The position numbers and the translations under genes were made by a program. Positions 23,662 to 45,703 of a DNA stretch of 64,000 bases are shown here, piece after piece. The notes under the pieces were generated by a model. That model had not been told where the DNA came from. It did no database searches and worked only from the letters and a program-made list of their open reading frames with translations. The stretch is taken from the NCBI RefSeq assembly GCF_030684315.1, contig NC_081369.1, positions 9,586,035 to 9,650,034 of the forward strand, given 5' to 3'. Positions within the stretch are counted from its first letter, which is position 1. The number at the start of each line of letters is the position of its first letter. This stretch comes from Stegostoma tigrinum (lineage: Eukaryota).

Positions 23662-23716
23662 ATGCCAGCGAGGATGATTTTTTTCTGCCTGACACTACTC
23701 GAGTTTATTCTTGCTG
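23662..23716 (+). CDS. Gene A exon 1, signal peptide MPARMIFFCLTLLEFILA
   Basis: Hydrophobic leader, phase-1 donor GTACTT at 23717, homologous to the gene B leader. Confidence 0.8.
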
Positions 23717-26700
23717 GTACTTTGGTTTTTGATTCACAGAACTGCTTTAATTCATTAAAGACTTTCGATGCAGCTCCTCCTTCCATTAAATAATCTTAAT
23801 TCATCTATCTTGTTAAGAACTTAACTCTCCTATCTTTATGCCGAATACGACAGTTAACTATGTTTTATTTTGTTTCTGACAGCTGCGGACCACACTTGTT
23901 TTAGGGTTACTCAAATACCTAAAAGAGCAGCTGCGAACAGACGGGAAGACATTACCTTCTACTGTACATTCTCAATTTGTCAGCAAAGTTCAAAGCCAAA
24001 TGTAATTTGGTGGAAGCAGGTTGGGAATGAACGTGTTCAGATTGAAGCCAGTGGTAGACAACAATTTGGATTTGAAAATGAAGCAACAGCGTTCCTTAGC
24101 TTGCTGCGCGTTGATATCCAAGATTCTGGACATTATCACTGCACGGTGAATTACCAAGGAATCGGTCAAAGAAGCGGAACCCCGTCCCAGCTATTTGTGC
24201 GTGGTAAGTGAGAGCGACGCTGTCTGAAATAATTTGAAATAACAAGATATTTCCTGATCGCTGATTTCACCAATATTCGCGGTTAAATCGTGTCCAGTTA
24301 TCATTTATACAGGAACCTACCCTTGATATTTCAGTTCCGTTGAAAAAAAGTAAAATTAGACGATCAATATCACCGGTAGAAAACTGAAGCTTTTATAAAT
24401 ATTAACAATTTACACTGTAATTCTAAAGACAGCCTATACACTATGTGCTTTTTGCCGATATACAAAACTTCCGATGTACATAGGCAACAAGAAACCGCTT
24501 TGTCAGGCTATTCGTCCACAATTCTTAGTCCCTGGTATGTTATTGAAGTCGTGTGACTGCCCGACAATTATTTTTTCTGAGATTGAAGATTCTAGAAATT
24601 AATTCTCACATTAATTTCACGTCATAATTTGAAAATCAACATGAACTTATTTCATGAGTGAAGGAATCGATGCAAAAGAAACACACAGTTTGACAGATAC
24701 AAGTAGGTTGAATCACTGACCTAGAATAAATAAAACAACGCAGAGAATCTGTAGCAATAACAAATTTGCTGGAAAAGGTCAGCAGGTCTGGCAGCATTTG
24801 TGGAGGACAAAACAGAGTTAACGTTTCGGGTCCGGCGACCCTTCCTCAGAACTTAAGGTTCAACTGATTCAATGTGTTTTGTCAATTGAAATGCCTTGTT
24901 TTTGAAATCCGACTGATGCAGTGATCTTGGGGTAATCGGCAATCTGCAACTTCACCGCCATTATGCACTTGAGCTTAAAAAAAACACCAGGGCAGACGAG
25001 CACAATTTGCTTTGTTCCTTTCTTGTGCGCAAGCTCAATTTAATTAATTTATTCAAATATGCGACATAAGCATTGCTAAGCATTTTGTAGTTTTGTTCTG
25101 CCGAGGAAGGCCAAGTATTGGATTTGATAATTCAAGTAAAAATGGATAAAAGCCGCTGCCTGGAGAGCTATTTGTTTAATTAACTGAATGTTTGTACATA
25201 AAATTAAGTTGAGAAGAAACTGCACTTCTGAGCATTGTAATTATAGGAATGCATAGCGTCTGTAAATCAGCCTCAAATTTAACAATTTCTGATTTGTTCC
25301 AGTAACTTGGCTTTGTTCAATCTCTGCTTGCAGTTGCTCCAGTCCCACTGAAAATTACGCCCAAGTTACATGAAGAAAATTCACTTGTGTCTTTGACCCT
25401 TCTGTGTGAAACAGCTGCATTTTATCCGGAGGATTTCACCCTCGCCTGGTATAAAAACGGCACGAAAACTACAGTCGGTATAAATACGAGCAAGGTGCAG
25501 AACAGTGAGGGACTGTATGAAGTATCCAGTTCTTTGTTTGATCCTCATCCTCCCTCAAATAATCTCAAGTATACCTGTGAAATATCTCACATCTCCCTCA
25601 AGACGCCTGCTGTTGTAACCCACAGTATTTCCACATTTGGCGGATTCCAAAAAGGCGAGTTATGCTAATTATGAACAAGATTCATCGCACAATGCGTGCA
25701 TTTCATAGAGCTAATCCACGATACTTCCGTGGAAATATCTCCTTTAAATGCATTAAAATAAGTTGAAATGTGAGTTACGAAAGTGGCAAAACTTTACTGG
25801 CATCCAAATTCCTTTATTTATGGAGTTAGTGTTATGTTCAGTAATGAGCTGTTCTATCCGTTTCTTATGTTTTGTCTTTTTTGGCCGTCGTTCATTGTCA
25901 TTATTTCCATGTTAAAAATGCTTTCTTCCTACTAGTGCCTACTTTTCTTGTACTGTTGCCAGTGGGCTACATTGTTTTATTTGGTTTCGCTCTGCTTTCT
26001 AGCGCTGCATTCCCCATTGTTTGTGTCCAGGGCAGAATTCTGAGACTTTATCTCTTGTCAAGTGGTATCTCCCACCCGGCCACGGGAGTTTGGTTGGGAT
26101 CAATGTCACATATACCACAAGGCCTGTGGGATGCCTCGACTGTCTAAAGTGCGTCAGATTTAATGTATTAACGATTTGCTCTCTTTGGCAGCAGTTTGTC
26201 ACCGCACAAAACAATAATTAATTACATCTACCCCATAAAAGTCCTTTGCTACGCAGTGTGTCGTCGATTTATTTGTACATGGTTCTTAACCATTTGCCCC
26301 GGTTCTCAAGTTGGTGAAGTCAGCAGTGAAATCATGCCACTAATTTCAAAAGGGCATATGTTAAGAAGTCAGAAAAGTCAAGAAGCCCAACACTGTGGTC
26401 CACAGTGAATCAATCTATCATGTAAGCCTACACTTCCAAAACAATTTTTCTACATCCTTGAACAGACAATCTATTTCTGAGATTGATTCAGAATTTGCGT
26501 TTGTTGGAAGTAGAAGTCACTTCAACATTCAACTGAAATAATATTTGGCACTTCAGCTTTCTCATTGCCCTTCAATAGCGCGGTGCAATTGAAAACACCA
26601 TTATACTGTAAGCAAGAAACTACAGCAAGACTTTTTCAAACATCGTCAGAAAATAATGTCCTCTTACTTTTGCAGAGGAGTGCAATACTCCAGTCGTCTT

Positions 26701-27998
26701 ATGGGCCCTAATTTCAATCATGGTGGGATTTGCGCTGGTTGTGCTAATGGCTGTAATTGCAAAGCGGCATGGACTTCGGTTTAACAAAAGTAAGGTCGAC
26801 TGCCAACTCTCTTGATCTTCGGTCTAGTTGTAGTCTAAGGATAACAAACGGGCGTAGCGCGGAGTAGTACGGAAAGAGAAAATATTTGAAATTGAAAATG
26901 CAATGGGTTTATTTTTCAGCGCGCTCAGATTGCTCCAAATACAGTTCATAAGGCAGAATTGTTCACACATTTGTGATCAACACGTTAATTTCCAGATGCA
27001 TTAGGTTCCAATATAAAAACTGTACTGTTCAAAGCAATTAATGAAATGTGCCGTGACAAACACCAAATTGGCAATTTGATTGTTCTGCCGAGGAATGGTT
27101 GGTCCTTGAAGAACAGGAGGATTAAGAACACATGGTAACGATGCAATACCATATTGTTGGCTCTGCTGCTAGCAATATAAACATTGTGTTGTGCCTCAAC
27201 TGCGCATTCGAAGCCTCTTTTTCACTTGGAATCAGAAATGTAAAGCTTCGTTTTCCATATGAAAACTGGGTTAATATTTCTATCATGCAATATAATTAAA
27301 TTTTATTGATATATAGATAAAGAAGAATGCACAAGGCAACCGGATGATCGTGACAAAGTGGTAAGTTCATTCCTTCAACCTGGTAGGTGTTTGCAATAAA
27401 TTGAACGATTGCAAAAATGGAAGTAATATGTACTAATCACGTCAGAGTATTTTATGATTGTTTGTTGAAGGACGTGTTCATCCAATGACGTTTGAAAAAC
27501 TGTTGGTACAAGATTGTTACTGATAAAGAATTTTAGTTGGATTTTAAAAATCTCGTTATAACTATGAGAATGCTTCTAACTAATAACACTTTAAATCACT
27601 CAGTCATTCTTTAGTTTTGGACACAAATTTACTGTCCAATGCTGCTGCCTTTTGACACTAAAATAGTATGTTCCAGAGTGAATGTGAAGAAGCTTTGCTT
27701 GTTATACTAGTCACTGTGCATTAATATTTGTATGCACGGGAATAAATCTGAAATGAGGATTCTGCTAGTGATCTCGTGCCCAGGTTAAAAGTGTTCAGTG
27801 CTTTTTGAAAGAATTGTTGAAGACATGAAATAGGAACTCGATGAAATATTTTCTTTTTGGTCCTTGCAGGTTGCCGTGGCTCAAGATGTGCAATATTCTG
27901 CAGTCCATTTCAGCAGAGACAAAACAGCTTCAACACACACATTTCAAACAGAGAGAAACATGAATAATGAGGTAGGGCTGACTAACAGAAGAGTTTAA
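23662..27998 (+). CDS. Gene A: type I IgSF receptor, leader-VJ-C1-TM-ITIM tail (NKp30-like V, SIRP/B7-H6/tapasin-like C1), predicted inhibitory, 327 aa
   Basis: Exons 23662-23716, 23883-24203, 25334-25654, 26676-26789, 27317-27360 and 27870-27998 join in frame (984 nt; phases 1,1,1,1,0). All introns are GT-AG except a GC donor at 25655. Exon order and most exon sizes match gene B. Confidence 0.88.
23883..24203 (+). CDS. Gene A exon 2, Ig V domain with germline J-like G strand
   Basis: VTQ.P, ITFYC, VIWWKQ, DSGHYHC, GTPSQLFVR; bounded by ctgacAG and GTAAGT. Confidence 0.92.
24816..24853 (-). ncRNA. Minimal hammerhead-ribozyme-like motif inside a Penelope-type fragment (about 24755-24853)
   Basis: AGTT-CTGAGGA-A-GGGTC-GCCG-GACCC-GAAAC-GTT-AACT: 4-bp stem I, 5-bp stem II, palindromic stem III. 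Confidence 0.6.
25334..25654 (+). CDS. Gene A exon 3, Ig C1-set domain
   Basis: LTLLCETAAFYPEDFTLAWYKNG...GLYEVSSSL...YTCEISHISLKTP (C1 motifs FYP, W, YxCxxxH). Confidence 0.92.
26676..26789 (+). CDS. Gene A exon 4, connecting peptide and uncharged TM
   Basis: EECNTPVVLWALISIMVGFALVVLMAVIAKRHGLRFNK; bounded by tttgcAG and GTAAGG. Confidence 0.88.
27317..27360 (+). CDS. Gene A exon 5, cytoplasmic 1
   Basis: 44 nt, NKEECTRQPDDRDKV, GTAAGT donor; near-identical 44-nt exon in gene B. Confidence 0.85.
27870..27998 (+). CDS. Gene A exon 6, cytoplasmic 2 with ITIM
   Basis: VAVAQDVQYSAVHFSRDK...RRV*; VQYSAV fits the [S/I/V/L]xYxx[I/V/L] consensus. Confidence 0.85.
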   Translation, partial: VAVAQDVQYSAVHFSRDKTASTHTFQTERNMNNEVGLTNRRV

Positions 27999-30130
27999 GT
28001 CATCAGTATAATATGGCGGTTCACGCTGTCGATGAGAACATTCACCTCTGTTGACACTGACTATGTGAGATATTGAGAGTTATTTGCGCGTACTTCTGAT
28101 GACCACTTTGCAGAAATCTTGTAAAAAGACACATTGCCAATATTTATAAATGCTGCTTTTACAGGACCCACAAGACGCAATCGGTAATACGGTGACGTAC
28201 ACCACACTAATGCTGAATAGTTCAGTGAAGCCGGAGGTGTACCACATTCCCAAAGAAGGCACAGAGTACGCTGCGTTGCAGACTGGAAGACGAAAATGAG
28301 TAAGAGAAAATATTTAAGTACAAACAAGAAATAACAAGCCATAACAATTTGGATGCGGAAGATACTGCTCAGACATAGACTGACACGTTTTTATTCTTTT
28401 CTGCTTAGAACTTCGGGCCTGTAGAATCTCTTATCTGCAAATAGGCATTGCAGTCGTATATCAGACAGGAATAGTTATGAACTATCACTCTAATATCAGC
28501 TTAATCTCATATGGTTGTTTTGAATTGCATCGGTGATGTGTGTTGAAAGTATGTTGCAAAGACGCTTTGCGTGCGGAGGGCTCTGCCCCTTAAGGACTTC
28601 CGCTTCTAGTTTCCGGTTTCTTGTATCCTCTCAGAATCTATGCTTTTCCCTTCTATTAATACAGGCTCAAAGCCAAGCTGCTTGGTCTTGCAGGTGAACA
28701 ATTCCTAATTCATGGGGCATGCAACCTGGTGTATATAACGTGCTATACCAGTCTCACCCTGCATCATTTTCCAGCAGTTTCTGTGCCAAAGTGACGTCAT
28801 GTGCAGCCAGCAGGCAACCGTGTCTCAACATCTTGAAGAAACAATCCACGGCGGCAACAATCATTCATTCACGATCGCTTTGCACATTAAGGCATGAGCA
28901 GCCTGCAACTTCACTCTAACTGACTCTAAGATCGGGTATTTGATCAGAATGGTGTTGATCAGAGTTGCAGTCCAAGGACTGGGGCATGGTCAGTCTTGTA
29001 GTTTCATCGGGATCAGTCCATGGATGAAGGCAAACGCAATCATTCAACAACATGGGCACAACTAGTCCAGGGCTTTCGGTTCAGATCCATCCACAGAAAG
29101 AAGTATGAGGAAACAAAATGTCAATGGCGGTTAAGGTGTAATGGGTAGCGTTCAGGAAAGTACAGTTGACACCGAGATGAAATCAGTCACGTATGATTTA
29201 AATGGCGGAGCAGGATCGAGGGACTGAATTTCTTGCTTTGGGTTTTAGTTCTTATGTTCTTACCATTGTGAGTTTTGGAATCCCTTTCCTTAAAAGGCAG
29301 TGGATGCGGAATTTTAAAGCATTTTAAGGTAAAGGCTGATATATTGTTGATGACCAAGGGGATGAAAGGTTATCAAAAATATGCAGGAATGTAGAATTGA
29401 GGATAAAATTAGATCTCCTGTGATCTTATTCAATGGCAGAGCACGTTTGAAGTTTAGAGTAGCCTACGTTAGTTTTTATGTTCACATCAACATAACTTGG
29501 GAGGCAGCAGCCACTTGAAGGAAACTCGGGAATCTAGTTATGTAGTTTGGGTGCTACAGCCTCAATGGGAGAAAGGGAGACTGACAATAGGGAAGGAAGT
29601 TTGAATGTTTTTTTGTGCCAGCATAGTTTAAAGGACGCTTATAAATGGACTCAGGGACGAGGATAGCTTGTCCACAGTTACGATCACCATGGCATGAAGG
29701 AAGAGAAGTGTGAGACCATACCTGGTATGGTCACCTCATGTTCCAAGGAACTTGAGATTGTGGGGTTGCATGAAGGTGGGCAGGAGGTGCATAGTGCAAA
29801 CCCATGTAGACAGGTTATGTGGGTACTTATAGAAATTTAAAACAGATGGAATTTCAAAAGAAGGGAGATCAGGAAAGTAGAGTGGATGTTCTGGGGTTCT
29901 CACATGTTGAGGTGACTGGAAGCCACTGAGCAAAGATCCGTCACTGTTGTCTTCAATCTTGCTGAAATTGTAATGCGTGAATTGTGAAGCATAATGGTGA
30001 AGAAACACATGGAGATAGTGTCCCGACCTGTGAGTGAGGGGACTGTATGAATATGCCGATATGAGTCTTTTGAAATGGAAACCACATTGTACATATACCC
30101 CTAAATGATAAAAGACCTAGACCTGCAGAC

Positions 30131-30476
30131 GTCTGTCTCTGCCTCCCTAACCTGTTCTTCCTCTCACCCATCCCTTCCCCCCAACCCAAGCCGCACTTCC
30201 ATCTCCTACCTACTAACCTCATCCCACCTCCTTGACCTGTCCATCTTCCCTGGATTGACCTATCCCCTCCCTACCTCCCCACCTATACTCTCCTCTCCAC
30301 CTATCTTCTTTTCTCTCCATCTTCGGTCCGCCTCCCCCTCTCTCCCAATTTATTCCAGAACCCGCTCCCCACCCCCCTCTCTGATGAAGGGTCTAGGCCC
30401 GAAACGTCAGCTTTTGTGCTCCTGAGATGCTGCTGGGCCTGCTGTGTTCATCCAGCCTCACATTTTATTATCTTAA
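30131..30476 (+). mobile_element. Penelope-like element 3' fragment with a pyrimidine-rich tract and hammerhead-like core
   Basis: CTGATGAAGGGTCTAGGCCCGAAACGTCAG at 30381; flanked by near-direct repeats ACC(T/C)GCAGAC. Confidence 0.7.
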
Positions 30477-31149
30477 ACCCGCAGACTGCCTGATCTCTGA
30501 CAATGACAGGATATTAAACCATAAGGATATCGACCATCCACACCAGTATATTTGCATGGAGAGGCTAAGGAAATGTGTCAGGATATCTCACCATGAAGGA
30601 CAAAGATGTCAGCATAAGGCATTGCTCAACATTCACATTGTTCATTTCCCTTCACAGGATTTCGTTTCCTTCCTGTCCCTACCACTATGTCAAAGCGTTG
30701 TCCCTGGTTTCATCAGAGGGAACTGGCCTCAGCAGTGGAAACTGTAGGTCTTGGACGTTTTGTAAGGAACGCTGGGATTTCTGTGTCAGAAATAATGTTT
30801 TGATTGCAAATTTGAATGTTAAATAGCTCAATCGTAAGGCAATACAAAATTAGAAATTTTGTGCTTAACATTTCCGCATTTATCCCAACTTTCACTGCAA
30901 CACCAACAAAGAATTGTTCTATTTTTCGATACAATGCCTCTGCTCATATTGTGAATAAAGTATGTTAAGTAACATAGTTACAGATCATAAATCGTTTGAA
31001 AGTTTGTCAATGAATTTCAACCAGACAAATTTGTGTAATAAAGTGATCTGTTGCAACAAATTCATCATCGTACCGTGTGATTAACAGCGTTGACGTGAAT
31101 AAAGCACTGTTTGGCAGACAGGAAGCATAGAATTTCAATGCATTCATCA

Positions 31150-32200
31150 TTTTTGGAGTTTTCAGGCAGTTGCTATTTGGGGTAGCACAGGGATCACAGC
31201 TTGGGTCCCAGTTATTCACAAGACATATTTATAACATGGATGAGGGAACTAAACGTAATATCTGCAAGTTTGCAGACGCGCACAAAGCTGGATGCGAGCG
31301 TAAAATGCAAGATGTTTGCAGCGATGCTTCAGTTTGATTTGGATAACCTAAGTGAATGGGCAAATGCATGGTAGATCAAGTATAATGTAGATCGATGTGA
31401 TGTTATGAGTTTAGTAGCAAAAGCTGGAATTCAGATTATTATTTCAATAATTGTCAATTGGCAAGGAGAAGGGGCATGACGAAATGAGATTTGGGTATCT
31501 TTGTACATTAGTCACTGAAAGCAAGCATGCATTTGCATCAGGTCGTGAAGAAGCGACTAGTTTGTTGACCTTCAAAGCAAGTGGATTTAAATAGAGGAGC
31601 AGGGATGTCTTACTGACAATGTACAGGGTCTTGGTGAGACCAACCAAGAGTTTCGTGTGAATTTTGTTCTCCGTTTCTGAGAAAGCCTGTCCTCGCAATA
31701 CGGGGAATGCAACACAGTTTCCAGACTAACTCCTGGGATTGCATAACTGACACATGCATACAGATTGAATCGATAAGGACTATATTCACAGGAATTTGAA
31801 AGAATGAGGCGAGATTACATAAAAATCTGACAAAACTGGACAGAGTAAGCGCAGGAAAGATGCTCCGATTGATCAGCGAAGCCAGAACTAGGGATCACAG
31901 ACGAGAGATGTGGGGAAGGCCATTTAGGATTGAGATGAGGAAAGATTTCTACATCTCGAGTGGTGAGTCAATGGAATTCTCTGCCAAAGAAAGTGGGTTA
32001 GGCAAAATATTAACTGTTTGCACGGATGAGTTCGAGATATTTCTCCAGGCTAAAAGTATAAAAAGACGCTGAGGGAGGCGTTGGGAAGAGAGTGAGAATT
32101 CAGCCAACTTGGATTCAGTGACTAGGATGATCAGCCAATGGTCATGTTGAATGCCTTGGATGGCTGAATTACCATCTCTTACTTTTGAGTTCATCTATTT
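31150..32200 (+). mobile_element. Old degenerate CR1 LINE RT and 3' end
   Basis: Decayed GVAQGSQLGSQLF, KFAD and RTRDHRREMWGRPFRIEMRKDF. Confidence 0.75.
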
Positions 32201-32654
32201 TTGTTTTAAGGTCATGAACAGGCGATTTCACACATTTTATCAGGTAGCTACCGCTTTTCTAGCTGTAGGAAAACAGTTTGAAAAGTGGTCACCAAGAGCA
32301 TAAATTTCCATTACTACAGCTAAGAACTGTCAGGGCATTTTAAGCATTCAGAATGGACAATTATGCATTGACATCGTGTGTAATTAATCGAATTAGCTGT
32401 GTTGCTCTTTAGGAATTTTGCTTTGAATACCTGTGGAGTTTGGCGTGAAGTGGTTTTTTGGTATTTGCATCATTAACGAGCATGTTTGCGCACCCCTCTG
32501 TTTCTGTTAGATGCTCCATTGTTCATGAACATTCACAAATAGTTTTAAAATGACTCGTCAGCTATGATCTGATTGACTCATTGTGGGACCACAACTCTTT
32601 CTATTCATGTGGTCGCCATTTAATAACGCACATACGATCCTGTAATGATTTTCC

Positions 32655-34737
32655 CAGTGGAGATGGTTTAAGGAACAGTTGTTGGGAGTGATGAGTAAAT
32701 ATGTCCCTCTGAGACAGGCAAGACGGGGTAAGATAAAGGAACCTTGGATGACGAGAGCGGTGGAGCTTCTAGTGAAAAGGAAGAAGGTAGCTTACATAAG
32801 GTGGAGGAAGCTAGGGTCAAGTTCAGCTAGAGAGGATTACATGCAGGCAAGGAAGGAGCTCAAAAATGGTCTGAGGAGAGCCAGGAGGGGGCACGAGAAA
32901 GGCTTGGCAGAAGGAATCCGGGAAAACACAAAGGCATTTTACACTTACGTGAGGAATAAGAGAATGGTCAAAGAAAGAGTAGGGCCGATCAGGGATAGCA
33001 TAGGGAACTTGTGTGTGGAGCCTGAGGAGGTAGGGGAAGCCCTAAATGAGTTTTTTGCTTCTGTCTTTACGAAAGAAACGACCTGTGTAGTGAATGAAAC
33101 CTTTGAAGAGCAGGTGTGCATGCTGGAATGGATAGAGATAGAGGAAGCTGATGTACTGAAAATTTTGTCAAACATTAAGATTGACAAGTCGCCAGGCCCG
33201 GATCAGATTTGTCCTCGGCTGCTTTGGGAAGCGAGAAATGCAATTGCTTCGCCACTTGCGAAGATCTTTGCATCCTCGCTCTCCACTGGAGTCGTACCTG
33301 AGGACTGGAGAGAGGCAAATGTAATTCCTCTCTTCAAGAAAGGAAATAGGGAAATCCCAGGCAATTATAGACCGGTAAGTCTCACGTCTGTCGTCTGCAA
33401 GGTGTTAGAAAGGATTCTGAGGGATAAGATTTATGACCATCTGGAAGAGCATGGCTTGATCAAATACAGTCAACACGGCTTTGTGAGGGGTAGGTCATGC
33501 CTTACAAACCTTATCGAGTTTTTTTGAGGATGTGACTAGTAAGGTTGATGAGGGTCAAGCTGTGGATGTGGTGTATATGGACTTCAGTAAGGCATTTGAT
33601 AAGGTTCCCCATGGAAGGCTCATTCAGAAGGTCAGGAGGAATGGGATACAGGGGAACTTAGCTGCTTGGATACAGAATTGGCTGGCCAACAGAAGACAGC
33701 GAGTGGTAGTAGAAGGAAAATATTCTGCCTGGAAGTCAGTGGTGAGTGGGGTTCCACAGGGCTCTGTCCTTGGGCCTCTACTGTTTGTAATTTTTATTAA
33801 TGACTTGGACGAGGGAATTGAAGGATGGGTCAGCAAGTTTGCAGACGACACAAAGGTCGGAGGTGTCGTTGACAGTATAGAGGGCTGTTGTAGGCTGCAG
33901 CGGGACATTGACAGGATGCAGAGATGGGCTGAGAGGTGGCAGATGGAGTTCAACCTGGATAAATGCGAGGTGATGCATTTTGGAAGGTCGAATTTGAAAG
34001 CTGAGTACAGGATTAAGGATAGGATTCTTGGCAGCGTGGAGGAACAGAGGGATCTTGGTGTGCAGATACATAGATCCCTTAAAATGGCCACCCAAGTGGA
34101 CAGGGTTGTTAAGAAAGCATATGGTGTTTTGGCTTTCATTAACAGGGGGATTGAGTTTAAGAGTCGTGAGATCTTGTTGCAGCTCTATAAAACTTTGGTT
34201 AGACCGCACTTGGAATACTGCGTCCAGTTCTGGGCGCCCTATTATAGGAAAGATGTGGATGCTTTGGAGAGGGTTCAGAGGAGGTTTACCAGGATGCTGC
34301 CTGGACTGGAGGGCTTATCTTATGAAGAGAGGTTGACTGAGCTCGGTCTCTTTTCATTGGAGAAAAGGAGGAGGAGAGGGGACCTAATTGAGGTATACAA
34401 GATAATGAGAGGCATAGATAGAGTCGATAGCCAGAGACTATTTCCCAGGGCAGAAATGGCTAGCACGAGGGGTCATAGTTTTAAGCTGGTTGGTGGAAAG
34501 TATAGAGGGGATGTCAGAGGCAGGTTCTTTACGCAGAGAGTTGTGAGAGCATGGAATGCGTTGCCAGCAGCAGTTGTGGAAGCAAGGTCATTGGGGTCAT
34601 TTAAGAGACTGCTGGACATGCATATGGTCACAGAAATTTGAGGGTGCATCCATGAGGATCAATGGTCGGCACAACATTGTGGGCTGAAGGGCCTGTCTGT
34701 GCTGTACTGTTCTATGTTCTATGTTCTATGTTCTATA
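32655..34737 (+). mobile_element. Young 5'-truncated CR1 LINE with a single +1 frameshift in a T-run near 33520
   Basis: ORFs 32679-33527 and 33532-34641 carry all RT motifs (KFADDTK); (TTCTATG)n tail. Confidence 0.97.
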
Positions 34738-36339
34738 TTGTGTGTCAGGCGGCTTGTTTCCACTCCTGGCTTAGACCCCTTTGTTGGCAACAGAATTAGT
34801 CGACTGAATTGATGACAATAATAGTGTCAGCGATATGCAGTACAATAATGTTACAGATTGTCTTTAAAGCCAACACTAACGCATGGAGAAACACAAATGG
34901 CATTCCCTTATCCTTAATTGAAAGTCTTTTTACATGATACATAATAATATCCGTCACCGTCAACGAATTAAGAAGAAGCAAAGCAAACTGAGCAATCAGA
35001 AGATTATGGAAACGTTTCTTTATATCATACGAATTAATACGCAAGGATATAGAATGATTCATCATTGGATGTAACCAGGATTCTTTCACAGAAGTGCAAC
35101 AGGTCAAATATGCGGCTGATTTCAAGCAAAAAAAAACGACTTTCCAACATTGACATGACACTATAGCCTAATATTAAGCTCTGCAAACTAAGCACCATGT
35201 CAGCATCTGCTATGCTGCAATCTTCCTTCCATACCACCCAGGCTTGGCGCTCGCTGGATTTTATGCTGCTCTCCGCTTCTCTTCAGTTCCTAATCGTTGA
35301 TCTGCGATGAACCTAGAACGGGATGTCAATTTCATGATCGAACTGTATACTCTGCGTTCTCTAGTCAACCTTATTAGAACTGGGACGGAACGGGCAATGT
35401 GTGAGTAACATCCAAATTATTTTATGCTGCCAAGGAAAGCACAACTTTTCCTCTAGACTCGATGAGTACAAAATTGATTCGACAAATCTGTCTCCCAAAT
35501 TTTCTGCTTTACGATCAAAGTAAGTGATCACCTAACCTTCTTTGTGTTAAGGTGTTGTCCAAATGTTGAATATATCAGGGTGGTGTTTATTGATTTTCAG
35601 CGAGGTTAATGCCCCTCAGTGCAGTTTAGCTATCCCGAAACAACTTACTCGTCTTTCACCATTCAATAATCACCATTCAATCGCATGATATCAATAATGC
35701 TAATAAGGAAAATATGGTGAAATCCTATTTATTGAAATAATGTTAATTTCTGCTAGAGTCGATGTAGGAAGATTTACTCATGCCTGAGCAATTTACATAA
35801 GCTCAAAGAGAACAGGAAACCAATTTATGAAGTGATTCCAGGTAATCCAAAATACTTACAGGCGGCATGTTTGCAACAGAAACTAGTCAATCACGTTGAC
35901 TGATATGGTTTAGGGAGGGGATGCTCTAGAAAGATATTGGCTAAAGTTCTAAACAGACATTTTGAAAGAACAGATGAATTTTACTTGGCAAAACCTTTAC
36001 ACTTTTGGCCAACTTGAACGTTTCTGATTCATTCCAGAAAATAATTTTCCAACTTCAACGACAGTTTATCTTCGTATTGTTACAGATTTTTCATTAACGT
36101 GGCACTGATAATGAACACAATTCACGCACTGCCTATCCTCTGTTCGGGTACATATTTGTGAAAGTAACGCAAACTGGAGTTTGTGCCGCAAAAGTTTCCA
36201 GTCTTACCATGACTGTTGATGTAAGTGATGCTGGCGGGCACCTTAAGACAGTTGTGGCTGGCAGGTATAAACTACACCATCCTGCACACGCCGTGCTTCT
36301 TCCAACGAACTCGAAACTTCATGAAGTCAATCCAAGGTC

Positions 36340-36800
36340 TTAGTCATACAGTCAGATTTGTACAGCACGGAAACAAGCCCTTCAATCCAAACCCTCCATA
36401 CCGACAATACATCCTAAATCAATATACTCTCATTTACAAGCATTCGGCCCATATCCCTCTAAATCCTTCCTATTCATTTACATATTTTAAATGTTGTAAT
36501 TATATCCAACACTACCCCGGCAACTCATTCTTACTGATACCACCCTCTGCGTGCAAGGGAATGCCCCTAAATTCATTCTCAAATCTTTTCTGCCTAATCA
36601 TAAATTTGTGCCCTCTAGTTTTTGTCTCCCCTGACCTTGGAAATAAACGACCTTGACTGTTCACCCTTTCCATACCCTTCATGATTTTATAAACCTCCTT
36701 AAGGTCACTCCTCAGCTTCTGATGTTCCAGGGAAGATAGCCCCAGCCTATTCAGTCTCACTGCTCGAAAACTCCAATCCCGGCAACGTCCTTTAAAATAT
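36340..36800 (-). mobile_element. CR1 3' fragment
   Basis: ORF 36512-36760: RLNRLGLSSLEHQKLRSDLKEVYKIMKG...KTRGHKF. Confidence 0.85.
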
Positions 36801-38581
36801 TTTCGTGTATACTTTCAAGGCTTTGTTTTTCACAGCTTCTACTCCAGTCAGAATTTCGGCACCAGCTCTTAGCCAGGGGGTTCTTAAATCCTCCGGGTAC
36901 CAGGCTGCTGTTTTTACATTCGAATTTCAGCCAAGTCACTGAGAGCCCTTTAACAAGAACAGTTTTCAATAGGTTTGTGGAACTAGAAAATATTATCACA
37001 TTTGTATGACCGAGTAATGTTAACCCGGGATGTTGTTCATATTCCTCTTCTTTCATTTAAATTTTAAAGTTGTTCCAAAACTTGAGGCAAATTCTGGCAC
37101 GAGTTGAGGTTAGCAGCGATAGTTCCAATTAAATATCTTTCAAATATATCCGCCAGATCACTTCACCATGCATATGGATTAGATCAATGTCTCGTTTTTC
37201 CCTCTTACTGTCTTTACTGTATTAATTTTTTTGTGTTTATTGGGAAAATAGAAACATAAGCCAATTCGAAGCATTTGATAAATTACAGAGTTTATGTTGT
37301 TTTGCATGAATATTGAGTTGACGGAGATCTCTTCAGTGCCTGCATGGACTTCAAATTAATTATGCAAAATGCACAGTTTAACCTCAGCCAGTACAGTTGA
37401 GAACAAACATTTCCAAGTCCTGATGAAGCTCCAGGCTATGTGATTTTCATGTGAGAAATATTTCCTACAGGGTTGAGTGGATTGAGGAACTGAGGGGTTT
37501 TGGCATTTGTCACCTCATGAAAGTGTATTATTGACAGTTGAGTGTTACTGGAGTCATCTTACCAGGCTCTGAGCAGCGTGTGTTGTGATGAAATGTGTGG
37601 CGGAACCTGGTGGGTTGGTCACCCAAGGCCACATTCATCTAGCTGCAACATCCCCTTTTCCTGAAGCACCGTCGCAAGGATATTATACAACTTGAAGTCT
37701 CTCTGTGGGAATAACGCAGCACCCCAACTTAAGAGCACTCATCAATGCATGCAATGTGAAAATATACCTTAACAAACCATGTCATAGAATGGAAATTTCT
37801 ACTGATCCAAGTGATAACGAACGATAAAGAATTTACATTAATGTGGTACATTATATAGCAAATTAGGAAATGTTTGGAAAGTGGGATCAAATTGCCATCA
37901 AGTGATACATACGTATCAATTATCTGATTACTTTCAGATTATCTCTGCGCTGCTTGCATCGGCAATAACTATGAATTATTGAGCCTATGGTCAAATTGGC
38001 TGGTTACCACTTTCAATCCAGGAGATAATGCTTTAAAATCAGTCAGAAATTTCAGCTGATAAGCCTTTTGTGGAGCAATTCTGGTCTCTTTTGTCTTGAA
38101 ATTAGGCTGTCATAATTCAAGTACAAACTGCTCAAACTGAATTGAAGTCAGCAAATATAGCAAAGAGTTATGTTCAGTTATTAGCTTTGATTTGTTTGTA
38201 TTAGGGAAAATGACTATGAAAATGAAGGTTTGATAGACCTGTTGAAATCATGACAGTACCAAAGGAATGAACAGTGGCCTGTTGATCCCATTGGCAGAAA
38301 TTCCAAAAATCAGAAGCTCTGACAATGGGAAATATGAAACAAAGCAACAGCCACATGATCAAAATCGTAGTTAAGACTTGTGCGCACCGATGGCCAGAGT
38401 GATGGAGACAGATTAACTCTTGTTTGGAAGCAATAAGGACATCAGCAGTATGAGTTAACTCTGCATTTGCAAATCTAATCGCTTTTTAAACATCTTTACA
38501 GCACCGATACACGTGTTTTCAGAAGGGAAATAACCTCAGAAATTACAGCATCACATTGGGCAATATAGGCTCAAATTAACA

Positions 38582-38612
38582 ACCGCATTCACAGGATGTT
38601 AAACGTCATTGC
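38582..38612 (+). promoter_or_regulatory. Conserved proximal promoter module of gene B
   Basis: ACCGCAtTCACAGGATGTTAAACGTCATTGC, paralogous to 23536-23566. Confidence 0.55.
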
Positions 38613-38705
38613 TAAATATCTCTTGGCCATCAATCTTTGCAGTTACCAACTCGCAGAAACTGCCAGAACTGTGTTTTGAACCTATTGCTATAAATGTAAG
38701 CGGGG

Positions 38706-38748
38706 ATGAATTTTCTCTATCTGACTCTACTTGAGATTATTCTTTCAG
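38706..38748 (+). CDS. Gene B exon 1, signal peptide MNFLYLTLLEIILS
   Basis: Hydrophobic leader, CAG/GTAAAT phase-1 donor. Confidence 0.8.
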
Positions 38749-41700
38749 GTAAATTAATTGAAAGAAAATTTCTTTAATTGATAGAAGGCTTTTGAAGCCA
38801 TTCATTTAAATAATCTTATTTCGTCTGTCTCGACAAATAATTAATTCTTCTACCTTTATGTTGAATATGACATAGTTGCTTTTACTTCACAATGTTCCTG
38901 ACAGCTGCAGACTCATTCAGTGTTACTCAAACGCCCAAAGAAGTGAGTGCATCCAGATGGGAAGACATTACCATGTACTGCACATTCCCCACCTCTCAGC
39001 ACTCTTCAAAACCAACGGTAGTTTGGTGGAAGCACGTTCGGAATGAACATATTCAGCTAAGTGCCAGTGGCAGAAAACGATTTGGTTTTGAAAATGAAAC
39101 AATGGTTTTCTTAAACTTGCTGAGCGTTAGTATCCAAGATTCTGGAGTTTATTACTGCACAGTGACTTATCAAGGAATAGGACAAATAAATGGAACCGGT
39201 TCTGAACTAATTGTTCAAGGTAAGTGAGAGAGCGAGACTAACTGAAATATTTAGAAAAAAGAAAACTCCAAAATATTTTCTGATCAATTATTTCATCAAC
39301 TTTGGTAGACTCATCTTGTGTACTCAGCATTTGCACAACAACCTACGCCTGATGTTTCCATTCCCTTGAAAGAATGTAATTGGATAATTAATATCACAAG
39401 CAGAATATTGCAGCATTTATACATATTAACCATTCAGAGTATAATTCTAAAGACACCTGATACATCAGAATTTCTGATACATATACCGGCAACAAACAAG
39501 TTATGATAATACAAGATTCTACAAGATTCTTTGCTTATTATTGTTATTGATGTCCCGTTCACCACCAGCTAGTCTTTCTGAGGTGGAAGAGTCCAGAAAG
39601 TGATTCTCACATAATTTCAATGCATTTTACCATTTGTAAAGTTTTCGATCAGAAAACTGCTAAATCCTGCACCCTTCATTTAATCAACAATTAGAAGCTT
39701 ATTTGTTAATATTCGTTTGAGAATAACAAACACAGGGCTCAAGAACACACATTTGCTTCCTCTCCTCCTCCGTTCCAGCTCAATACAATATTTATCCCCA
39801 ATTTCACAACCCCAGGAATACAAAGCAAAGTTTCCTTGCATTGTTTTAGCGATGAATATCGAATACTGGATTTACACTTCAAGTAAATAAGAACAAATGT
39901 CACCATCAATGAGAGATATTTACTGTCCTAACTGAATGCTTGTCCAAAAAATAGAAAGAAAATAAGCTGTGTCTTTGAATGTCATTATTGCAATAAAGGG
40001 AGCCGATTGAAGACGCGACACGAATTTAACATTTTGTGATTGTGATCAATAACTTCGTTTTGCTTACTCCCTTCCGGCAGTTGCCCCAGTCCCACTGAAA
40101 ATTATATCCAAGTTGCATGAAGAGAATCCAACCCGATATTTGAGTCTTTTATGTGAGACATCTGCATTTTATCCGGAGAATTTCACTCTGACCTGGTACA
40201 AAAACGGGATCGAAACTGACCGAGGAATAAAAACCAGTAAGGTGCAGAATAACGTGGGGCTGTATGAAGTATCCAGTTCTTTGGTTGAGACTCAACCTCC
40301 TTCGCATAAAACCAAGTATACCTGTTTGGTATCCCATGTCTCCCTCAAAACGCCTGCTGTCATCACACGCACTATTTCTACTTTTGATGGAGCCCTAAAA
40401 GGCTAGTAAACTACTGCTAAAATGCAACAAGATGCATTGTATAAGATATAGTTCATGTTGGTATTCCACTGCCTCTTATTTTGAAAATTATGTTAAAGTT
40501 GCCATTTGTGTTGCAAAAACAGCTAAACCTTACCGACATTCAAATCCCTTTATTTATTAAATAGTACTATACAGAGAGCTAGTTGTTCCACTGGTTTCTT
40601 TTTTGTCTGGTCATTTCATTAGTGAGACTTGTTCACTGTCTTTGACTTCCATGTCAACGTGGTTTCATTCTTCCTGATGCCCACTTTCCTTCTACCGTAT
40701 CGATTATGAGGAGGTATATTTTTTGTTTGCTTCACTCTGTCTTCGTCTCCTTCCCCTGTGGTTGCGTCCAGTGCAGAATAAGATTCATTGCCTTGTCAAA
40801 ACCTAACTCTTACTTATCTGTGGCACTTTAAGTTGGTATTGGTCTTGCATGTATCAGATAAACTTTGCTCTCTACATGTCCAGGGTGTTGTGATTAAATG
40901 CATTACAATTTGATTATTCTGTAGATACTTTGACCCTGCGTGAAATGATATTTTTTGTGCCACTTCATTCATAGATATCCTTTTTATTTACACATAATGA
41001 ATGCATAAATACAGTTTATTTATTTGTGAAGACTTGCTCACTGAATCCATCAGTCCAGAATTTGACGTGGTTAGCCAAGAAAATGCTGGTGAAATCATTT
41101 CTCTAATTTCAACAAGTACAGGGGCAAGAAAGTATAGGAATAAGATGTCAACTCGACTTGCAACTGAAGTGATATTTGGCAATTTAGCTTTTTCATTGAT
41201 CTTCCATAGCACTGTGCAGTTGAAAATACCACCATATTTTAAGAAAAGAATTATAGTGGCCATTTTTTTCAACAATCAGAAGCAAACGATGCCCTCTTAA
41301 TCCTGCAGAGAGTATCAACAGTTCACTCGTAATCTGGTCTTCAGTTCGTAAAGCGGTTGCTTTGGCATTTCTTGTAATCCTGGCCATAATAGGAGCGTGT
41401 ACTGCACGTGAATATATCCAAGGTAAGATCTACTTTCACCTTTTTATTTTGCACAAAACCTATTTTCATTTGCCATCTGTGGAAAACGAATGGGATGGGT
41501 GAGATGAAGGCCTACTGGGAATAATTTGAATTGACTTAAAATTGAAAAATGATTGTTTTATTTTCTTCATGAACTTGGATTGCAAATGCAGAAAGGTTCA
41601 TGGGCACATGTTTGGGCCATTCAGCACCCTCAATCCTGTTTAGCCCTTCAAGGGGATCACAGCCGATCCACTGCTTAACTCCATATACATATCCCTAAAT

Positions 41701-43119
41701 ACCTTTGCTTAATAAAGTGTTGTCGATCTCAGGTATAAAATTAAATAAACTTTAATTTGCAGAAATACCTTCCAAACGTTTACCATCTATGTGTGTTAAA
41801 GTGCTTTCTAACATCTCCCCAGAAGGGTTGAGACCTAATTTGTGGATTATGCCCACTATATCTAGAATCGCCATCCAAACAGAAATTGTGCATGTCAATC
41901 TACACAGTCTTTTCCTGTTAGTGTTTTGAAGAGTTCAATCAGAAAACCCATGAACCTTATAATTTCTAGAGAAAACAGGCCTAATCTAGGTGGTGTCTAC
42001 TCATATTTAAATCACTGATGTCCTGGTAATATTCTTGTGAATGTACATTGTACTCTTTCTCAGGACAGTGCATCTTTCCTATGCTTTGGTGTCCAGATCT
42101 GTTCACAGTTTGCAAAAAAAAGTTATCGAATGTGTATAGTTCTCCCATGAGTTAATTTCCAAGCAATTTTCACTTTTCAGCATGACAGATGAAATATACC
42201 CTGACAAACATGAAGTCAGTCATTTGATTATTCCGCAGAGGAATGTTTGCTCCTTGAAACTTTGGAGGATAGGTGCAGATTTCGACAATGACTTCTCTAT
42301 CCTCTACACACTCATTTTGCGCTTGGAAACTGAGTCAATAATTCCATCACTCAATGTAATTATATTTTACTGATTTGTAGATAAAGAGGAATGCACAAGG
42401 CAACAAGACCATAAAGAAAACATGGTAAGTTTATAAAATGTGAGGCTGGATGAACACAGCAGGCCAAGCAGCATCTCAGGAGCACAAAAGCTGACGTTTC
42501 GGGCCCTTCCTCTCTGATGAAGGGTCTAGGCCCGAAACGTCAGCTTTTGTGCTCCTGAGATGCTGCTTGGCCTGCTGTGTTCATCCAGCCTCACATTTTA
42601 TTATCTTGGAATTCTCCAGCATCTGCAGTTCCCATTATCAATGGTAAGTTTATTCCTTTGTCATATTATGGGTTTAAAATGTTTGGCCAATTGCAATAAT
42701 AGGAGAAATATATGTTGATATAACCAGAACATTTTAAACCTATTTATTGAAAAATACATCATACAGTATTAGTGTGTGTTTCAAAATTAGATTGGAAATG
42801 TGTTTGGTACAGACTATGTTGTTGACACAGGATGGAAAATTGATTTTTTTAAAAAACTGGAAGTACTCATATCTGGGAGAATGTTTCTTGGTAGTAAGGC
42901 ATTTATAGATTGAGTCGTTCCTTATTCTTGAAGAGAAATTTACTATTTAAAGTGGCAATTTTAAATTTAAGATTGTGTTGTAGCATGACGGTGAGGATGT
43001 TTAATTTGTTATATTGAATGCTGCACAGGACAATTAATGGAATATTGTCATTCTTGTTTTTGCAGGAAGCTGTGGTTGAGGCCTGTGACAGACTTCAGCA
43101 AAGACGGGAGAACTCTTAA
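38706..43119 (+). CDS. Gene B: type I IgSF receptor, leader-VJ-C1-TM(Arg/Lys)-short tail without ITIM, predicted activating (or mainly secreted), 296 aa
   Basis: Exons 38706-38748, 38905-39219, 40081-40401, 41309-41422, 42381-42424 and 43066-43119 join in frame (891 nt); GC donor at 40402; paralogous to gene A exon by exon. Confidence 0.85.
38905..39219 (+). CDS. Gene B exon 2, Ig V domain with J-type GxG motif
   Basis: FSVTQTPK...ITMYC...VVWWKH...QDSGVYYCTVTYQGIGQINGTGSELIVQ; GTAAGT donor. Confidence 0.93.
40081..40401 (+). CDS. Gene B exon 3, Ig C1-set domain
   Basis: LSLLCETSAFYPENFTLTWYKNG...YTCLVSHVSLKTP; same 321-nt length as in gene A. Confidence 0.92.
41309..41422 (+). CDS. Gene B exon 4, TM with basic residues
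   Basis: ESINSSLVIWSSVRKAVALAFLVILAIIGACTAREYIQ; 114 nt as in gene A; bounded by ctgcAG and GTAAGA. Confidence 0.85.
41590..42110 (-). mobile_element. Degenerate CR1 3' fragment in gene B intron 4 (absent from the gene A intron)
   Basis: Antisense CR1 3' end features such as GGCCATTCAGCACCCTCAATCCTGTT and GGATTATGCCCACTATATCTAGA. Confidence 0.6.
42381..42424 (+). CDS. Gene B exon 5, cytoplasmic 1
   Basis: DKEECTRQQDHKENM, 44 nt, GTAAGT donor. Confidence 0.85.
42435..42640. mobile_element. Penelope-type fold-back insertion with a 13-bp target-site duplication
   Basis: Perfect 73-bp inverted repeat (42433-42505 / 42529-42601); TSD ATGGTAAGTTTAT at 42422 and 42641; the paralogous site in gene A is empty. 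Confidence 0.9.
43066..43119 (+). CDS. Gene B exon 6, truncated tail EAVVEACDRLQQRRENS*
   Basis: Homologous to gene A exon 6, with a net 11-nt deletion across the ITIM codons. Confidence 0.75.
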   Translation, partial: EAVVEACDRLQQRRENS

Positions 43120-45582: not shown

Positions 45583-45703
45583 AGTGATAATGGGAACTGC
45601 AGATGCTGGAGAATCCAAGATAATAAAAGGTGAGGCTGGATGAACACAGCAGGCCCAGCAGCATCTCAGGAGCACAAAAGCTGACGTTTCGGGCCTAGAC
45701 CCG
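45583..45703 (-). mobile_element. Short Penelope-type end insertion with a 14-bp TSD
   Basis: CCACTTATTTTGGC at 45569-45582 and 45704-45717 flanks the same repeat seen at 42435-42640. Confidence 0.85.

What the first reader, a model, noticed from the sequence alone, without database searches (positions are those of the whole stretch)
23662..43119. Paired inhibitory/activating receptors with a non-rearranging, antigen-receptor-like VJ-C1-TM ectodomain
Seen: two adjacent paralogues share a six-exon plan, and their V domains are 64/101 identical by my manual count, including an invariant FG (CDR3-equivalent) loop YQGIGQ. A has a neutral TM and an ITIM (VQYSAV). B has W-x3-R-K at the start of the TM and no ITIM. 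Known: V+J+C1+TM is the TCR chain layout; a J-type G strand fused in one V exon plus an N-terminal TM Arg is the NKp30 pattern (FcR-gamma/CD3-zeta coupling); V-C1 with paired signalling recalls SIRPs. Inference: a shark paired-receptor family combining an NKp30-like VJ with a C1 domain, probably binding a shared ligand, and a candidate model for the pre-RAG antigen-receptor ancestor. Automated annotation may already label it SIRP-like or B7-H6-like, so novelty is unverified.
Basis: partly seen in the sequence, partly recalled or inferred. Interest (0 to 1): 0.85.

Follow-up and report, generated by a model that had tools for sequence, protein, structure and literature searches.

The report
Shark SIRP-like inhibitory/activating receptor pair
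Two neighbouring zebra-shark genes encode related antibody-chain-like surface receptors, one with an inhibitory tail and one with a charged membrane anchor. They belong to a large, misnamed and apparently undescribed receptor family of sharks, rays and chimaeras that most resembles mammalian SIRPs.

Summary
Gene A (23662-28299) and gene B (38706-43119) are tandem paralogues with leader, V(J), C1, TM and tail exons. V domains are 66/104 identical, C1 domains 73/106.

Gene A has seven coding exons, not six. It equals RefSeq XP_059507523.1 of Stegostoma tigrinum, misnamed "HLA class II DRB1 beta chain-like". Its tail carries VQYSAV, VTYTTL and TEYAAL.

Gene B has an open six-exon frame, W-SSV-R-K at the start of its TM, a truncated tail and a decayed relic of A's last exon. 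It therefore looks like an activating receptor derived from an inhibitory one. I found no protein model and no RNA data for B.

A third, dead copy (C, about 60-61.7 kb) and an inverted C1 relic (36.3-37.0 kb) lie alongside.

All ~75 named relatives are chondrichthyan, with inconsistent automatic names. R-in-TM/short-tail and ITIM forms recur across species. The closest known kin are SIRPs and Ig/UrIg V-C1 chains, roughly tied. NKp30 likeness is not specific, a shared ligand is doubtful at 63% V identity, and the "pre-RAG ancestor" idea is untested.

This scan had already found the same family several times elsewhere on this chromosome.

The parts
23662..23716 (+). Gene A exon 1: leader (MPARMIFFCLTLLEFILA), phase-1 donor
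   Evidence: exact substring of RefSeq protein P0152
23883..24203 (+). Gene A exon 2: V domain with degenerate J motif (GTPSQLFV); FG loop YQGIGQ
25334..25654 (+). Gene A exon 3: C1-set domain, followed by a GC donor (AAG|gcgagt)
   Evidence: Pfam C1-set 40.6 bits. The RefSeq junction FQK-EEC requires this donor
26676..26789 (+). Gene A exon 4: short stalk with Cys, uncharged TM (VVLWALISIMVGFALVVLMAVIA), KRHGLRFNK
   Evidence: helix 239-269 in the model
27317..27360 (+). Gene A exon 5: cytoplasmic KEECTRQ... segment, conserved in B
27870..27971 (+). Gene A exon 6: cytoplasmic, ITIM VQYSAV
28165..28299 (+).
38706..38748 (+). Gene B exon 1: leader from the second ATG (MNFLYLTLLEIILS). The ATG homologous to A's start is followed by TAA
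38905..39219 (+). Gene B exon 2: V domain with intact J motif (NGTGSELIV) and YQGIGQ
   Evidence: Pfam V-set 36.4 bits
40081..40401 (+). Gene B exon 3: C1-set domain, followed by a GC donor (AAG|gctagt)
   Evidence: Pfam C1-set 41.6 bits
41309..41422 (+). Gene B exon 4: TM with Arg-Lys at its outer end (LVIWSSVRK-AVALAFLVILAIIGACTA-REYIQ)
42381..42424 (+). Gene B exon 5: cytoplasmic KEECTRQQDHKENM
43066..43119 (+). Gene B exon 6: EAVVEACDRLQQRRENS then stop; homologue of A's ITIM exon with an 11-nt deletion at the VQY codons (AVVE ends, ACDR follows)
43340..43437 (+). Gene B: decayed relic of A's exon 7. The acceptor is kept, the tyrosine-motif codons are deleted or changed, and the 3' end is homologous to A's. 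Possibly a 3'-UTR exon after a donor at 43158
   Evidence: Alignment; sequence. The splicing is inferred
60173..60514 (+). Gene C: C1 pseudo-exon with three in-frame stops and a lost donor (AAG|ac)
61575..61681 (+). Gene C: TM pseudo-exon of activating type (FWAPTRVRARLMFLALMIVFR then stop), 107 nt instead of 114
36258..36983 (-). Inverted, interrupted relic of a C1 exon from another subfamily (best matches P0062 and P0120), with several stops

Best explanation
The window holds part of a tandem cluster of a chondrichthyan multigene family of non-rearranging type I membrane receptors. Each has a leader, a V domain with a germline J-like G strand, one C1-set domain, a TM and a tail.

Gene A is an intact inhibitory member. 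After ligand binding, its three tail tyrosine motifs (VQYSAV, VTYTTL, TEYAAL) would be phosphorylated and recruit SH2 phosphatases of the SHP-1/2 type. This step is inferred from motif rules.

Gene B is an intact-looking activating-type member. Its tail is cut short by a stop in the homologue of A's ITIM exon. Arg-Lys at the outer end of its TM would pair with an acidic residue in an ITAM adaptor of the CD3-zeta/DAP12/FcR-gamma class. This step is also inferred.

B arose from an A-like inhibitory gene. It still carries a decayed copy of A's last exon and 3' end, and its leader ATG has shifted.

Gene C and the inverted C1 relic are dead copies from the same birth-and-death process.

A and B are old duplicates (dS about 0.6) inside an orectolobiform-specific clade. 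They are paired in the broad sense of opposite signalling with related ectodomains, not a proven same-ligand pair.
For: Gene structure:
- All seven exon translations of A are exact, ordered substrings of XP_059507523.1.
- B has the same exon phases and splice sites.
- A and B share sequence over promoter, exons and intron parts.

Domains:
- Pfam V-set and C1-set.
- AlphaFold pLDDT above 90 over both Ig domains.

Constraint on B:
- dN/dS is 0.45 for V and 0.29 for C1, at dS 0.55-0.68.
- Under neutral change, 263 codons would stay stop-free with P = 0.03 to 0.0006.
- The truly dead copy C has three stops in one exon.

Origin of B:
- A relic of exon 7 and a truncated exon 6 are visible in the alignment.

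Family-wide pairing:
- Arg at the TM start with tails of 5-40 residues and no motif occurs in P0008, P0012, P0032, P0039, P0120, P0207 and P0208.
- Neutral TM with ITIM/ITSM tails occurs in P0029, P0031, P0157, P0166 and P0204.

Other:
- A, B, C, P0001, P0165 and the Chiloscyllium protein P0003 form one clade (SH-aLRT 99) in both the V and the C1 tree.
- B's DNA is covered by independent contigs of the sample with no differences over its exons.
Against: There is no RNA evidence for either gene here: no RNA run of this species is indexed.

Three protein searches that found other Stegostoma members found no model for B. RefSeq therefore may not call B a coding gene.

B's Arg-Lys lies at the edge of an 18-residue hydrophobic core. 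It could be juxtamembrane rather than buried.

A 2014 survey reported no FcR-gamma homologue in sharks (PMC4016189), so the adaptor is unknown.

B's cytoplasmic part is about 40 residues, longer than in most activating receptors.

Pairwise dN/dS cannot assign the constraint to B's lineage alone.

ITIM function is read from motifs only.
Confidence: 0.6

Rival explanations
1. Gene B is not a working activating receptor. It is either an unexpressed, slowly decaying copy or a signalling-dead decoy that merely lost its ITIM tail, with Arg-Lys acting as an ordinary juxtamembrane stop.
For: No protein model for B in the collection, although A, P0001 and P0165 of the same species were found. The first ATG is destroyed. 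The exon-7 relic is decaying. No RNA data exist. Dead copies sit next door.
Against: All six exons are open with intact splice sites at dS about 0.6. dN/dS is 0.29-0.45 and P(no stop) under neutrality is at most 0.03. W-x(2-3)-R directly before the hydrophobic core recurs in short-tailed members of other species.
Confidence: 0.25
2. The family is the true cartilaginous-fish homologue of tetrapod SIRPs. A would be SIRP-alpha-like and B SIRP-beta-like, with one C1 domain lost or the second C1 gained later in tetrapods.
For: The nearest named clusters in the ESM Atlas are SIRP-alpha clusters (0.97 and 0.96). The family profile aligns colinearly with SIRP-alpha d1-d2 (57.8 bits), with a close match over the C1 B-C strands, and with d3 (45.1 bits). 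Gnomon most often names members SIRP-alpha-like or SIRP-beta-1-like. Signalling is paired, as in SIRPs.
Against: Ig light chains (60-64 bits) and UrIg2 (52 bits) score the same. The V profile does not put SIRP in the best 60. The structural search is topped by B7-H6, PD-L2 and nectins, all tied. There is one C1 domain, not two. Synteny could not be tested. ITIM/ITSM tails are common to many IgSF inhibitory receptors.
Confidence: 0.2
3. The genes are NKp30 (NCR3)-family members, or direct relics of the pre-RAG antigen-receptor precursor.
For: There is a germline-joined V with a J-like G strand and a C1 domain, the layout of an antigen-receptor chain. The best Foldseek matches are Ig light chains and a TCR beta chain. 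VNAR and TCR V domains are among the best single-domain V hits. C1-less V-TM forms exist in the family.
Against: NKp30 is not among the best V hits. No member is named NCR3-like by any source. An N-G-T sequon sits on the J-like bulge in most members, which does not suit Ig-like V-V pairing (inference). UrIg and UrIg2 are closer to Ig/TCR by published trees and linkage (PMC12227049). A's J motif is degenerate.
Confidence: 0.07

Closest known systems
SIRP family (SIRP-alpha / SIRP-beta-1), tetrapods
   Same: N-terminal V domain with a J-like G strand followed by C1-set domain(s). Inhibitory members have several tail tyrosine motifs, and activating members have a basic TM residue and a short tail. 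Genes are clustered. It is the best named match in the ESM Atlas and gives a colinear profile match.
   Different: One C1 domain instead of two. V similarity is not specific. It is a large, fast-diverging multigene family seen only in Chondrichthyes. CD47 binding and orthology are untested. The literature places SIRP origin in tetrapods or calls it unknown (PMC13262535, PMC9652883).
UrIg / UrIg2 (non-rearranging shark VJ-C1 genes; PMC12227049)
   Same: Germline VJ exon, C1-set domains, elasmobranch. UrIg2 is the top PDB profile hit (2.3e-35 summed over three C1 domains).
   Different: UrIg and UrIg2 have many C domains, form antibody-like dimers and are single genes linked to the MHC or the antigen-receptor complex. 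The present family has one C1 and ITIM or charged-TM signalling. Its V+C1 unit scores only 52 bits against UrIg2.
Ig light chains / TCR chains
   Same: V(J)-C1 order, phase-1 exons, C1 hallmarks. Foldseek's best matches are Fab light chains, and profile matches reach 60-64 bits.
   Different: No rearrangement signals and no separate J. There is a signalling tail. No conserved interchain Cys (only A has a stalk Cys). A glycan sequon sits on the J bulge.
NKp30 (NCR3)
   Same: Non-rearranging V with a J-like G strand, and Arg near the outer end of the TM in the activating form. This rests on established knowledge, not on a test here.
   Different: NKp30 has no C1 domain and is not among the best V matches. 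No source names family members NCR3.
B7-H6 / B7 family
   Same: Top structural match for the V-C two-domain ectodomain (4zso_E, Z 16.9, rmsd 4.1 A over 193 residues). Several ray members are auto-named NCR3LG1-like.
   Different: The match is tied with PD-L2, nectins, Rst and others within 1-2 Z units. B7 proteins are ligands without paired ITIM/charged-TM forms.
KIR-type birth of activating receptors from inhibitory ones
   Same: The activating gene keeps fossils of the inhibitory tail: an early stop, a relic last exon and a new TM charge.
   Different: Unrelated Ig domains (C2/I type in KIR). This is an analogy of process only, recalled from general knowledge.

Membership tests
IgSF C1-set domain (criteria in PMC2785349) | Pfam C1-set above cut-off; (F/Y)(F/Y/H)P at the BC loop; 13 residues between Cys(B) and Trp(C); x-V-x-H after Cys(F) | tested here: met
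   40.6 and 41.6 bits against cut-off 21. CETAAFYPEDFTLAW and CETSAFYPENFTLTW both have 13 residues between Cys and Trp. YTCEISH and YTCLVSH are present.
VJ-type V domain | V-set fold with D-x-G-x-Y-x-C and a germline G-x-G-[TS]-x-L-x-V G strand in the same exon | tested here: met
   B has DSGVYYC and GTGSELIV. The family consensus is NGTGSxLxV. A has GTPSQLFV, with the second Gly lost.
SIRP family | V-C1-C1 ectodomain | tested here: not met
   Only one C1 exon lies between the V and TM exons in A, in B and in all aligned relatives.
SIRP family | Sequence closer to SIRP than to other V-C1 proteins | tested here: inconclusive
   SIRP-alpha 57.8 bits, Ig light chains 60-64 bits, UrIg2 52 bits for the V+C1 unit. 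ESM Atlas favours SIRP. The V profile does not.
SIRP family | Orthology by synteny with the SIRP locus; CD47 as ligand | not testable with these tools
Paired inhibitory/activating receptors | Inhibitory member: ITIM [ILVS]xYxx[ILV] in the tail, uncharged TM | tested here: met
   VQYSAV at residue 292, VTYTTL at 329 and TEYAAL at 352 of P0152. The TM has no charged residue.
Paired inhibitory/activating receptors | Activating member: basic residue in the TM, short tail without ITIM, association with an ITAM adaptor | tested here: inconclusive
   Arg-Lys lies directly before an 18-residue hydrophobic core and there is no ITIM. Burial in the membrane and adaptor binding cannot be tested here.
Paired inhibitory/activating receptors | Highly similar ectodomains (shared ligand) | tested here: not met
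   V 63% and C1 69% identical. A's V is 100% identical to P0001, encoded elsewhere.
NKp30 / NCR3 | Single V(J) ectodomain with specific similarity to NKp30 | tested here: not met
   A C1 domain is present. NKp30 is absent from the best 60 hits of the V profile and of the V exon of A.
Rearranging antigen receptors / UrIg | Split V and J with RSS (Ig/TCR), or a multi-C1 antibody-like chain (UrIg) | tested here: not met
   V and the J-like strand lie in one exon. There is one C1 exon.
PRARP (lead from an earlier scan note) | V-C2-TM receptors of bony vertebrates (recalled from Fu et al. 2019, which is not held) | not tested
   No PRARP sequence was given by any tool. The second domain here is C1-set, not C2.

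The most novel reading that the evidence does not exclude
The family is the cartilaginous-fish sister or ancestral form of the SIRPs. That would be a non-rearranging VJ-C1-TM receptor with paired ITIM/charged-TM signalling already present at the root of jawed vertebrates. It would move the origin of SIRP-type receptors from tetrapods to early gnathostomes. It would also give, beside UrIg, a second living model of a membrane-bound VJ-C1 chain like the one the RAG transposon split.
Probability: 0.2. Interest if true: 0.7.

Novelty: new variant of a known kind. Interest (0 to 1): 0.45.

Why it matters
C1-set domains are almost confined to antigen receptors, MHC, tapasin and SIRPs.

Reviews call the origin of SIRPs unknown (PMC9652883), and a 2026 survey dates them to tetrapods (PMC13262535).

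A large V(J)-C1 family with inhibitory and activating forms in sharks, rays and chimaeras bears on that question. Pipelines name it variously MHC class II-like, tapasin-related, Ig lambda-like, B7-H6-like or SIRP-like, and I found it in no paper.

This locus adds a clear example of an activating gene still carrying the fossil of an inhibitory tail. It also flags a RefSeq misnaming: gene A is not an MHC class II beta chain.

As biology it is an expected kind of innate receptor system, not a new principle.

Tried and rejected
- **RNA evidence.** The look-up of sequencing runs returned only four DNA-like contig sets from one sample. Read laying confirmed B's DNA with no differences over the exons but gave no transcripts.
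- **Synteny and cross-species gene structure.** The MHC paper's supplements did not contain the catshark accessions. The rest of the window holds only LINEs and repeats.
- **A RefSeq model for B.** Three homologous-protein searches found none. The last used an alignment with B's exons as separate rows.
- **Joined models.** B was handled exon by exon only. For A I used the database protein P0152 as returned by the tools.
- **An old, separate activating TM lineage for B.** BLAST of the TM exon gave only weak, mixed matches, so I make no claim.
- **Structure search as a family test.** Foldseek is saturated by Fab light chains, and VIA-align gives many tied V-C proteins.
- **Literature.** Eight searches found no description of this family. 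The UrIg J Immunol 2023 paper, Ohta 2019 and the shark NCR3 paper are not held. I therefore could not check whether the published nurse-shark "NCR3 family" overlaps this family.


Full report
**What is there**

ORF and three-frame scans show two V-like and two C1-like open segments on the + strand. A tblastn of these against the window finds each pair plus a third, broken C1 copy near 60.2 kb.

A blastn comparison of the two regions shows homology from about 460 bp upstream of the start codon through the V exon. It continues through the C1 exon, the approach to the TM exon, a small cytoplasmic exon and the 3' end.

Reading the borders gives seven coding exons for gene A and six for gene B. All are AG...GT except a GC donor after each C1 exon. 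The Ig exons are in phase 1-1.

Pfam calls the second domain C1-set in both genes: 40.6 and 41.6 bits against a cut-off of 21. The first domain is V-set or I-set.

**Identity of the locus**

A HMMER search of B's V exon against 1.8 billion representatives returned a family of 220-400-residue proteins. Exact look-ups show that the best hit's cluster is from Stegostoma tigrinum. It contains XP_059507523.1, a 363-residue protein named [quoted passage not shown].

All seven exon translations of gene A are exact, ordered substrings of that protein. The window is therefore zebra shark, and gene A is already predicted, under a wrong name.

The RefSeq junction FQK-EEC can only come from the GC donor.

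For A I used this database protein as the tools returned it. B was searched exon by exon only.

**Gene A**

- Uncharged TM (VVLWALISIMVGFALVVLMAVIA).
- A stalk cysteine.
- A 103-residue tail with VQYSAV, VTYTTL and TEYAAL.

This is the layout of an inhibitory receptor. Recruitment of SHP-type phosphatases is inferred from the motif rules, not shown.

**Gene B**

The ATG homologous to A's start is followed by TAA. The next ATG, homologous to A's Met5, opens a 14-residue hydrophobic leader.

The V and C1 exons are open. The TM exon reads LVIWSSVRK-AVALAFLVILAIIGACTA-REYIQ. The homologue of A's ITIM exon has lost the tyrosine codons to an 11-nt deletion and ends in a stop 54 nt in.

Downstream, the acceptor, part of the body and the 3' end of A's exon 7 are still recognisable but decayed. 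B thus looks like an activating-type gene made from an inhibitory one.

The relic donor at 43158 lies 38 nt after B's stop. If it is still used, the last intron would sit in the 3' UTR without triggering nonsense-mediated decay. This is inference.

**Is B alive?**

A versus B, by exon:

| Exon | Amino-acid identity | dN/dS |
|---|---|---|
| V | 66/104 | 0.45 |
| C1 | 73/106 | 0.29 |
| TM | 8/37 | 0.78 |

dS is 0.55-0.68 for the V and C1 exons.

Random substitution of A's exons 2-5 leaves 263 codons stop-free in 2.7% of trials at 12.5% change per site. At 20-30% change the figure is 0.35% or less.

Gene C shows what decay looks like. It has three stops in the C1 exon, a lost donor, a 107-nt TM exon with a stop, and no V exon.

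B has therefore been under constraint for much of its history.

Against this:
- Three protein searches that recovered other Stegostoma members returned no model for B.
- No RNA run of the species is indexed.
- DNA contigs of one sample cover B's exons without a difference. This supports the assembly, not expression.

**The family**

About 75 relatives carry names, and all are from sharks, rays or the elephant fish. The names include SIRP-alpha-like, SIRP-beta-1-like, tapasin-related, Ig lambda-like, NCR3 ligand 1-like, CD276 homologue, PD-L1-like and MHC class II-like.

A 20-sequence alignment shows these conserved features:
- a V domain with NGTGSxLxV;
- a V[AP]PTPLK junction;
- a C1 domain with CETAAFYPExxTLTWYKNG and YTCLVSHxSL;
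- a TM;
- either long tails with repeated xxYAxLxL ... TVYAQ ... TEYAE motifs, or short tails.

The TM and tail classes were as follows:

| TM and tail type | Count |
|---|---|
| Neutral TM with ITIM/ITSM | 38 |
| Basic residue at the TM start, no motif | 28 |
| Neutral TM, no motif | 18 |
| Basic TM with motif | 15 |

These counts include isoforms and juxtamembrane lysines, so they are indicative only.

Clear Arg-in-TM, short-tail forms occur in Scyliorhinus, Mustelus, Heterodontus, Heptranchias, Chiloscyllium and several rays. C1-less V-TM forms also exist.

In both the V and the C1 tree one clade has SH-aLRT 99. It holds A, B, C (C1 tree only), two further Stegostoma genes (P0001, P0165) and, in the V tree, a Chiloscyllium fragment (P0003). 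The A/B split is thus old but lies within orectolobiform sharks.

A's V domain is 100% identical to P0001, a gene elsewhere on the 68-Mb chromosome whose model ends after C1.

**Closest known families**

- **V exon of A alone.** It finds only weak PDB hits: CD79b, VSIG4, BTLA, VNAR.
- **V-only family profile.** It finds VNAR (5.9e-13), CD79b, and TCR alpha and delta V domains. Neither NKp30 nor SIRP is in the best 60.
- **Full-length family profile.** Its best hits are UrIg2, Ig chains and SIRP-alpha. Per V+C1 unit the scores are SIRP-alpha d1-d2 57.8 bits, Ig light chains 60.7 and 64.4 bits, and UrIg2 52.2 bits. These are effectively tied. The SIRP-alpha d2 B-C strand region is strikingly similar to the family consensus in that alignment.
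- **AlphaFold model of P0152.** It is confident over both domains. Foldseek returns Fab light chains and a TCR beta chain. VIA-align on cluster representatives puts B7-H6 first (Z 16.9) but within 1-2 Z of PD-L2, nectins, VNAR and CD79b.
- **ESM Atlas.** The nearest named clusters are two SIRP-alpha clusters (0.97 and 0.96).

My reading is that the family works like SIRPs and is most simply called SIRP-like. Membership in the SIRP family is not shown. One defining feature, two C1 domains, is not met.

**Literature**

SIRP-alpha's V-C1-C1 structure was already proposed as a link to antigen-receptor evolution (PMC2785349). UrIg and UrIg2 are the current non-rearranging shark candidates for the gene invaded by RAG (PMC12227049, PMC10751288).

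SIRPs are reported from mammals, birds and lizards, and their origin is called unknown (PMC9652883). A 2026 survey dates them to Tetrapoda (PMC13262535).

A 2014 survey found no FcR-gamma in sharks (PMC4016189), which leaves B's adaptor open.

I found no paper describing this family. Several key papers are not held.

**Earlier scan notes**

The scan had already flagged this family at least seven times on this chromosome, from 7.4 Mb before the window to 0.57 Mb beyond it, and once on another piece. One of these is another inhibitory/activating pair.

My independent tests agree with those readings. They add the relic-exon evidence, the constraint test on B, and the two dead copies.

**Verdict**

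This is a new variant of a known kind: paired, SIRP-like V-C1 receptors. Gene A is already predicted but misnamed, and gene B is apparently unannotated. Interest is moderate.

Noticed in passing
window 25647-25660 and 40394-40407: Both C1 exons end in a GC donor (AAG|gcgagt, AAG|gctagt). Read-through gives a stop after 3 codons in A (..FQKGELC*) and at once in B (..ALKG*). Paralogue models P0001, P0151 and P0165 end ..FQKGELVAVSFVTKCIVE, so soluble V-C1 forms by donor skipping are possible.
   Followed up: partly
window 36258-36983 (- strand): Inverted, interrupted and stop-ridden relic of a C1 exon from a different subfamily (best matches the catshark protein P0062 and the bamboo-shark protein P0120), lying between genes A and B.
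   Followed up: partly
window 60173-61681: Gene C is a dead activating-type copy. Its C1 exon has three stops, the donor is lost, the TM exon reads W-APT-R-V-R-A-R then stop, and the V exon is missing although intron-2 homology begins at 56421.
   Followed up: yes
window 872-2953 (+), 32649-34638 (+), 62692-63999 (-): Three LINE reverse-transcriptase ORF copies. The second and third are very similar and nearly open, which suggests a young element inserted between the receptor genes.
   Followed up: no
window 42426-42640; also 30376-30475 and 45617-45702: About 100-bp element at 96-99% identity between copies (an inverted pair in B's intron 5). Summed contig depth there reaches millions, so it is a very high-copy SINE-like repeat of this genome.
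   Followed up: partly
P0091 versus P0095, and P0035, P0058, P0073, P0097 (database proteins): Family members or isoforms that lack the C1 domain (V-TM-ITIM). Skipping the phase 1-1 C1 exon would give an NKp30-like layout. This could explain confusion with NCR3-type genes.
   Followed up: no
RefSeq XP_059507523.1, XP_059507815/816/818/819 (Stegostoma tigrinum): These are named MHC class II beta chain-like but are V-C1 receptors of this family, so the automatic names are wrong.
   Followed up: yes
I did not examine it.
   Followed up: no
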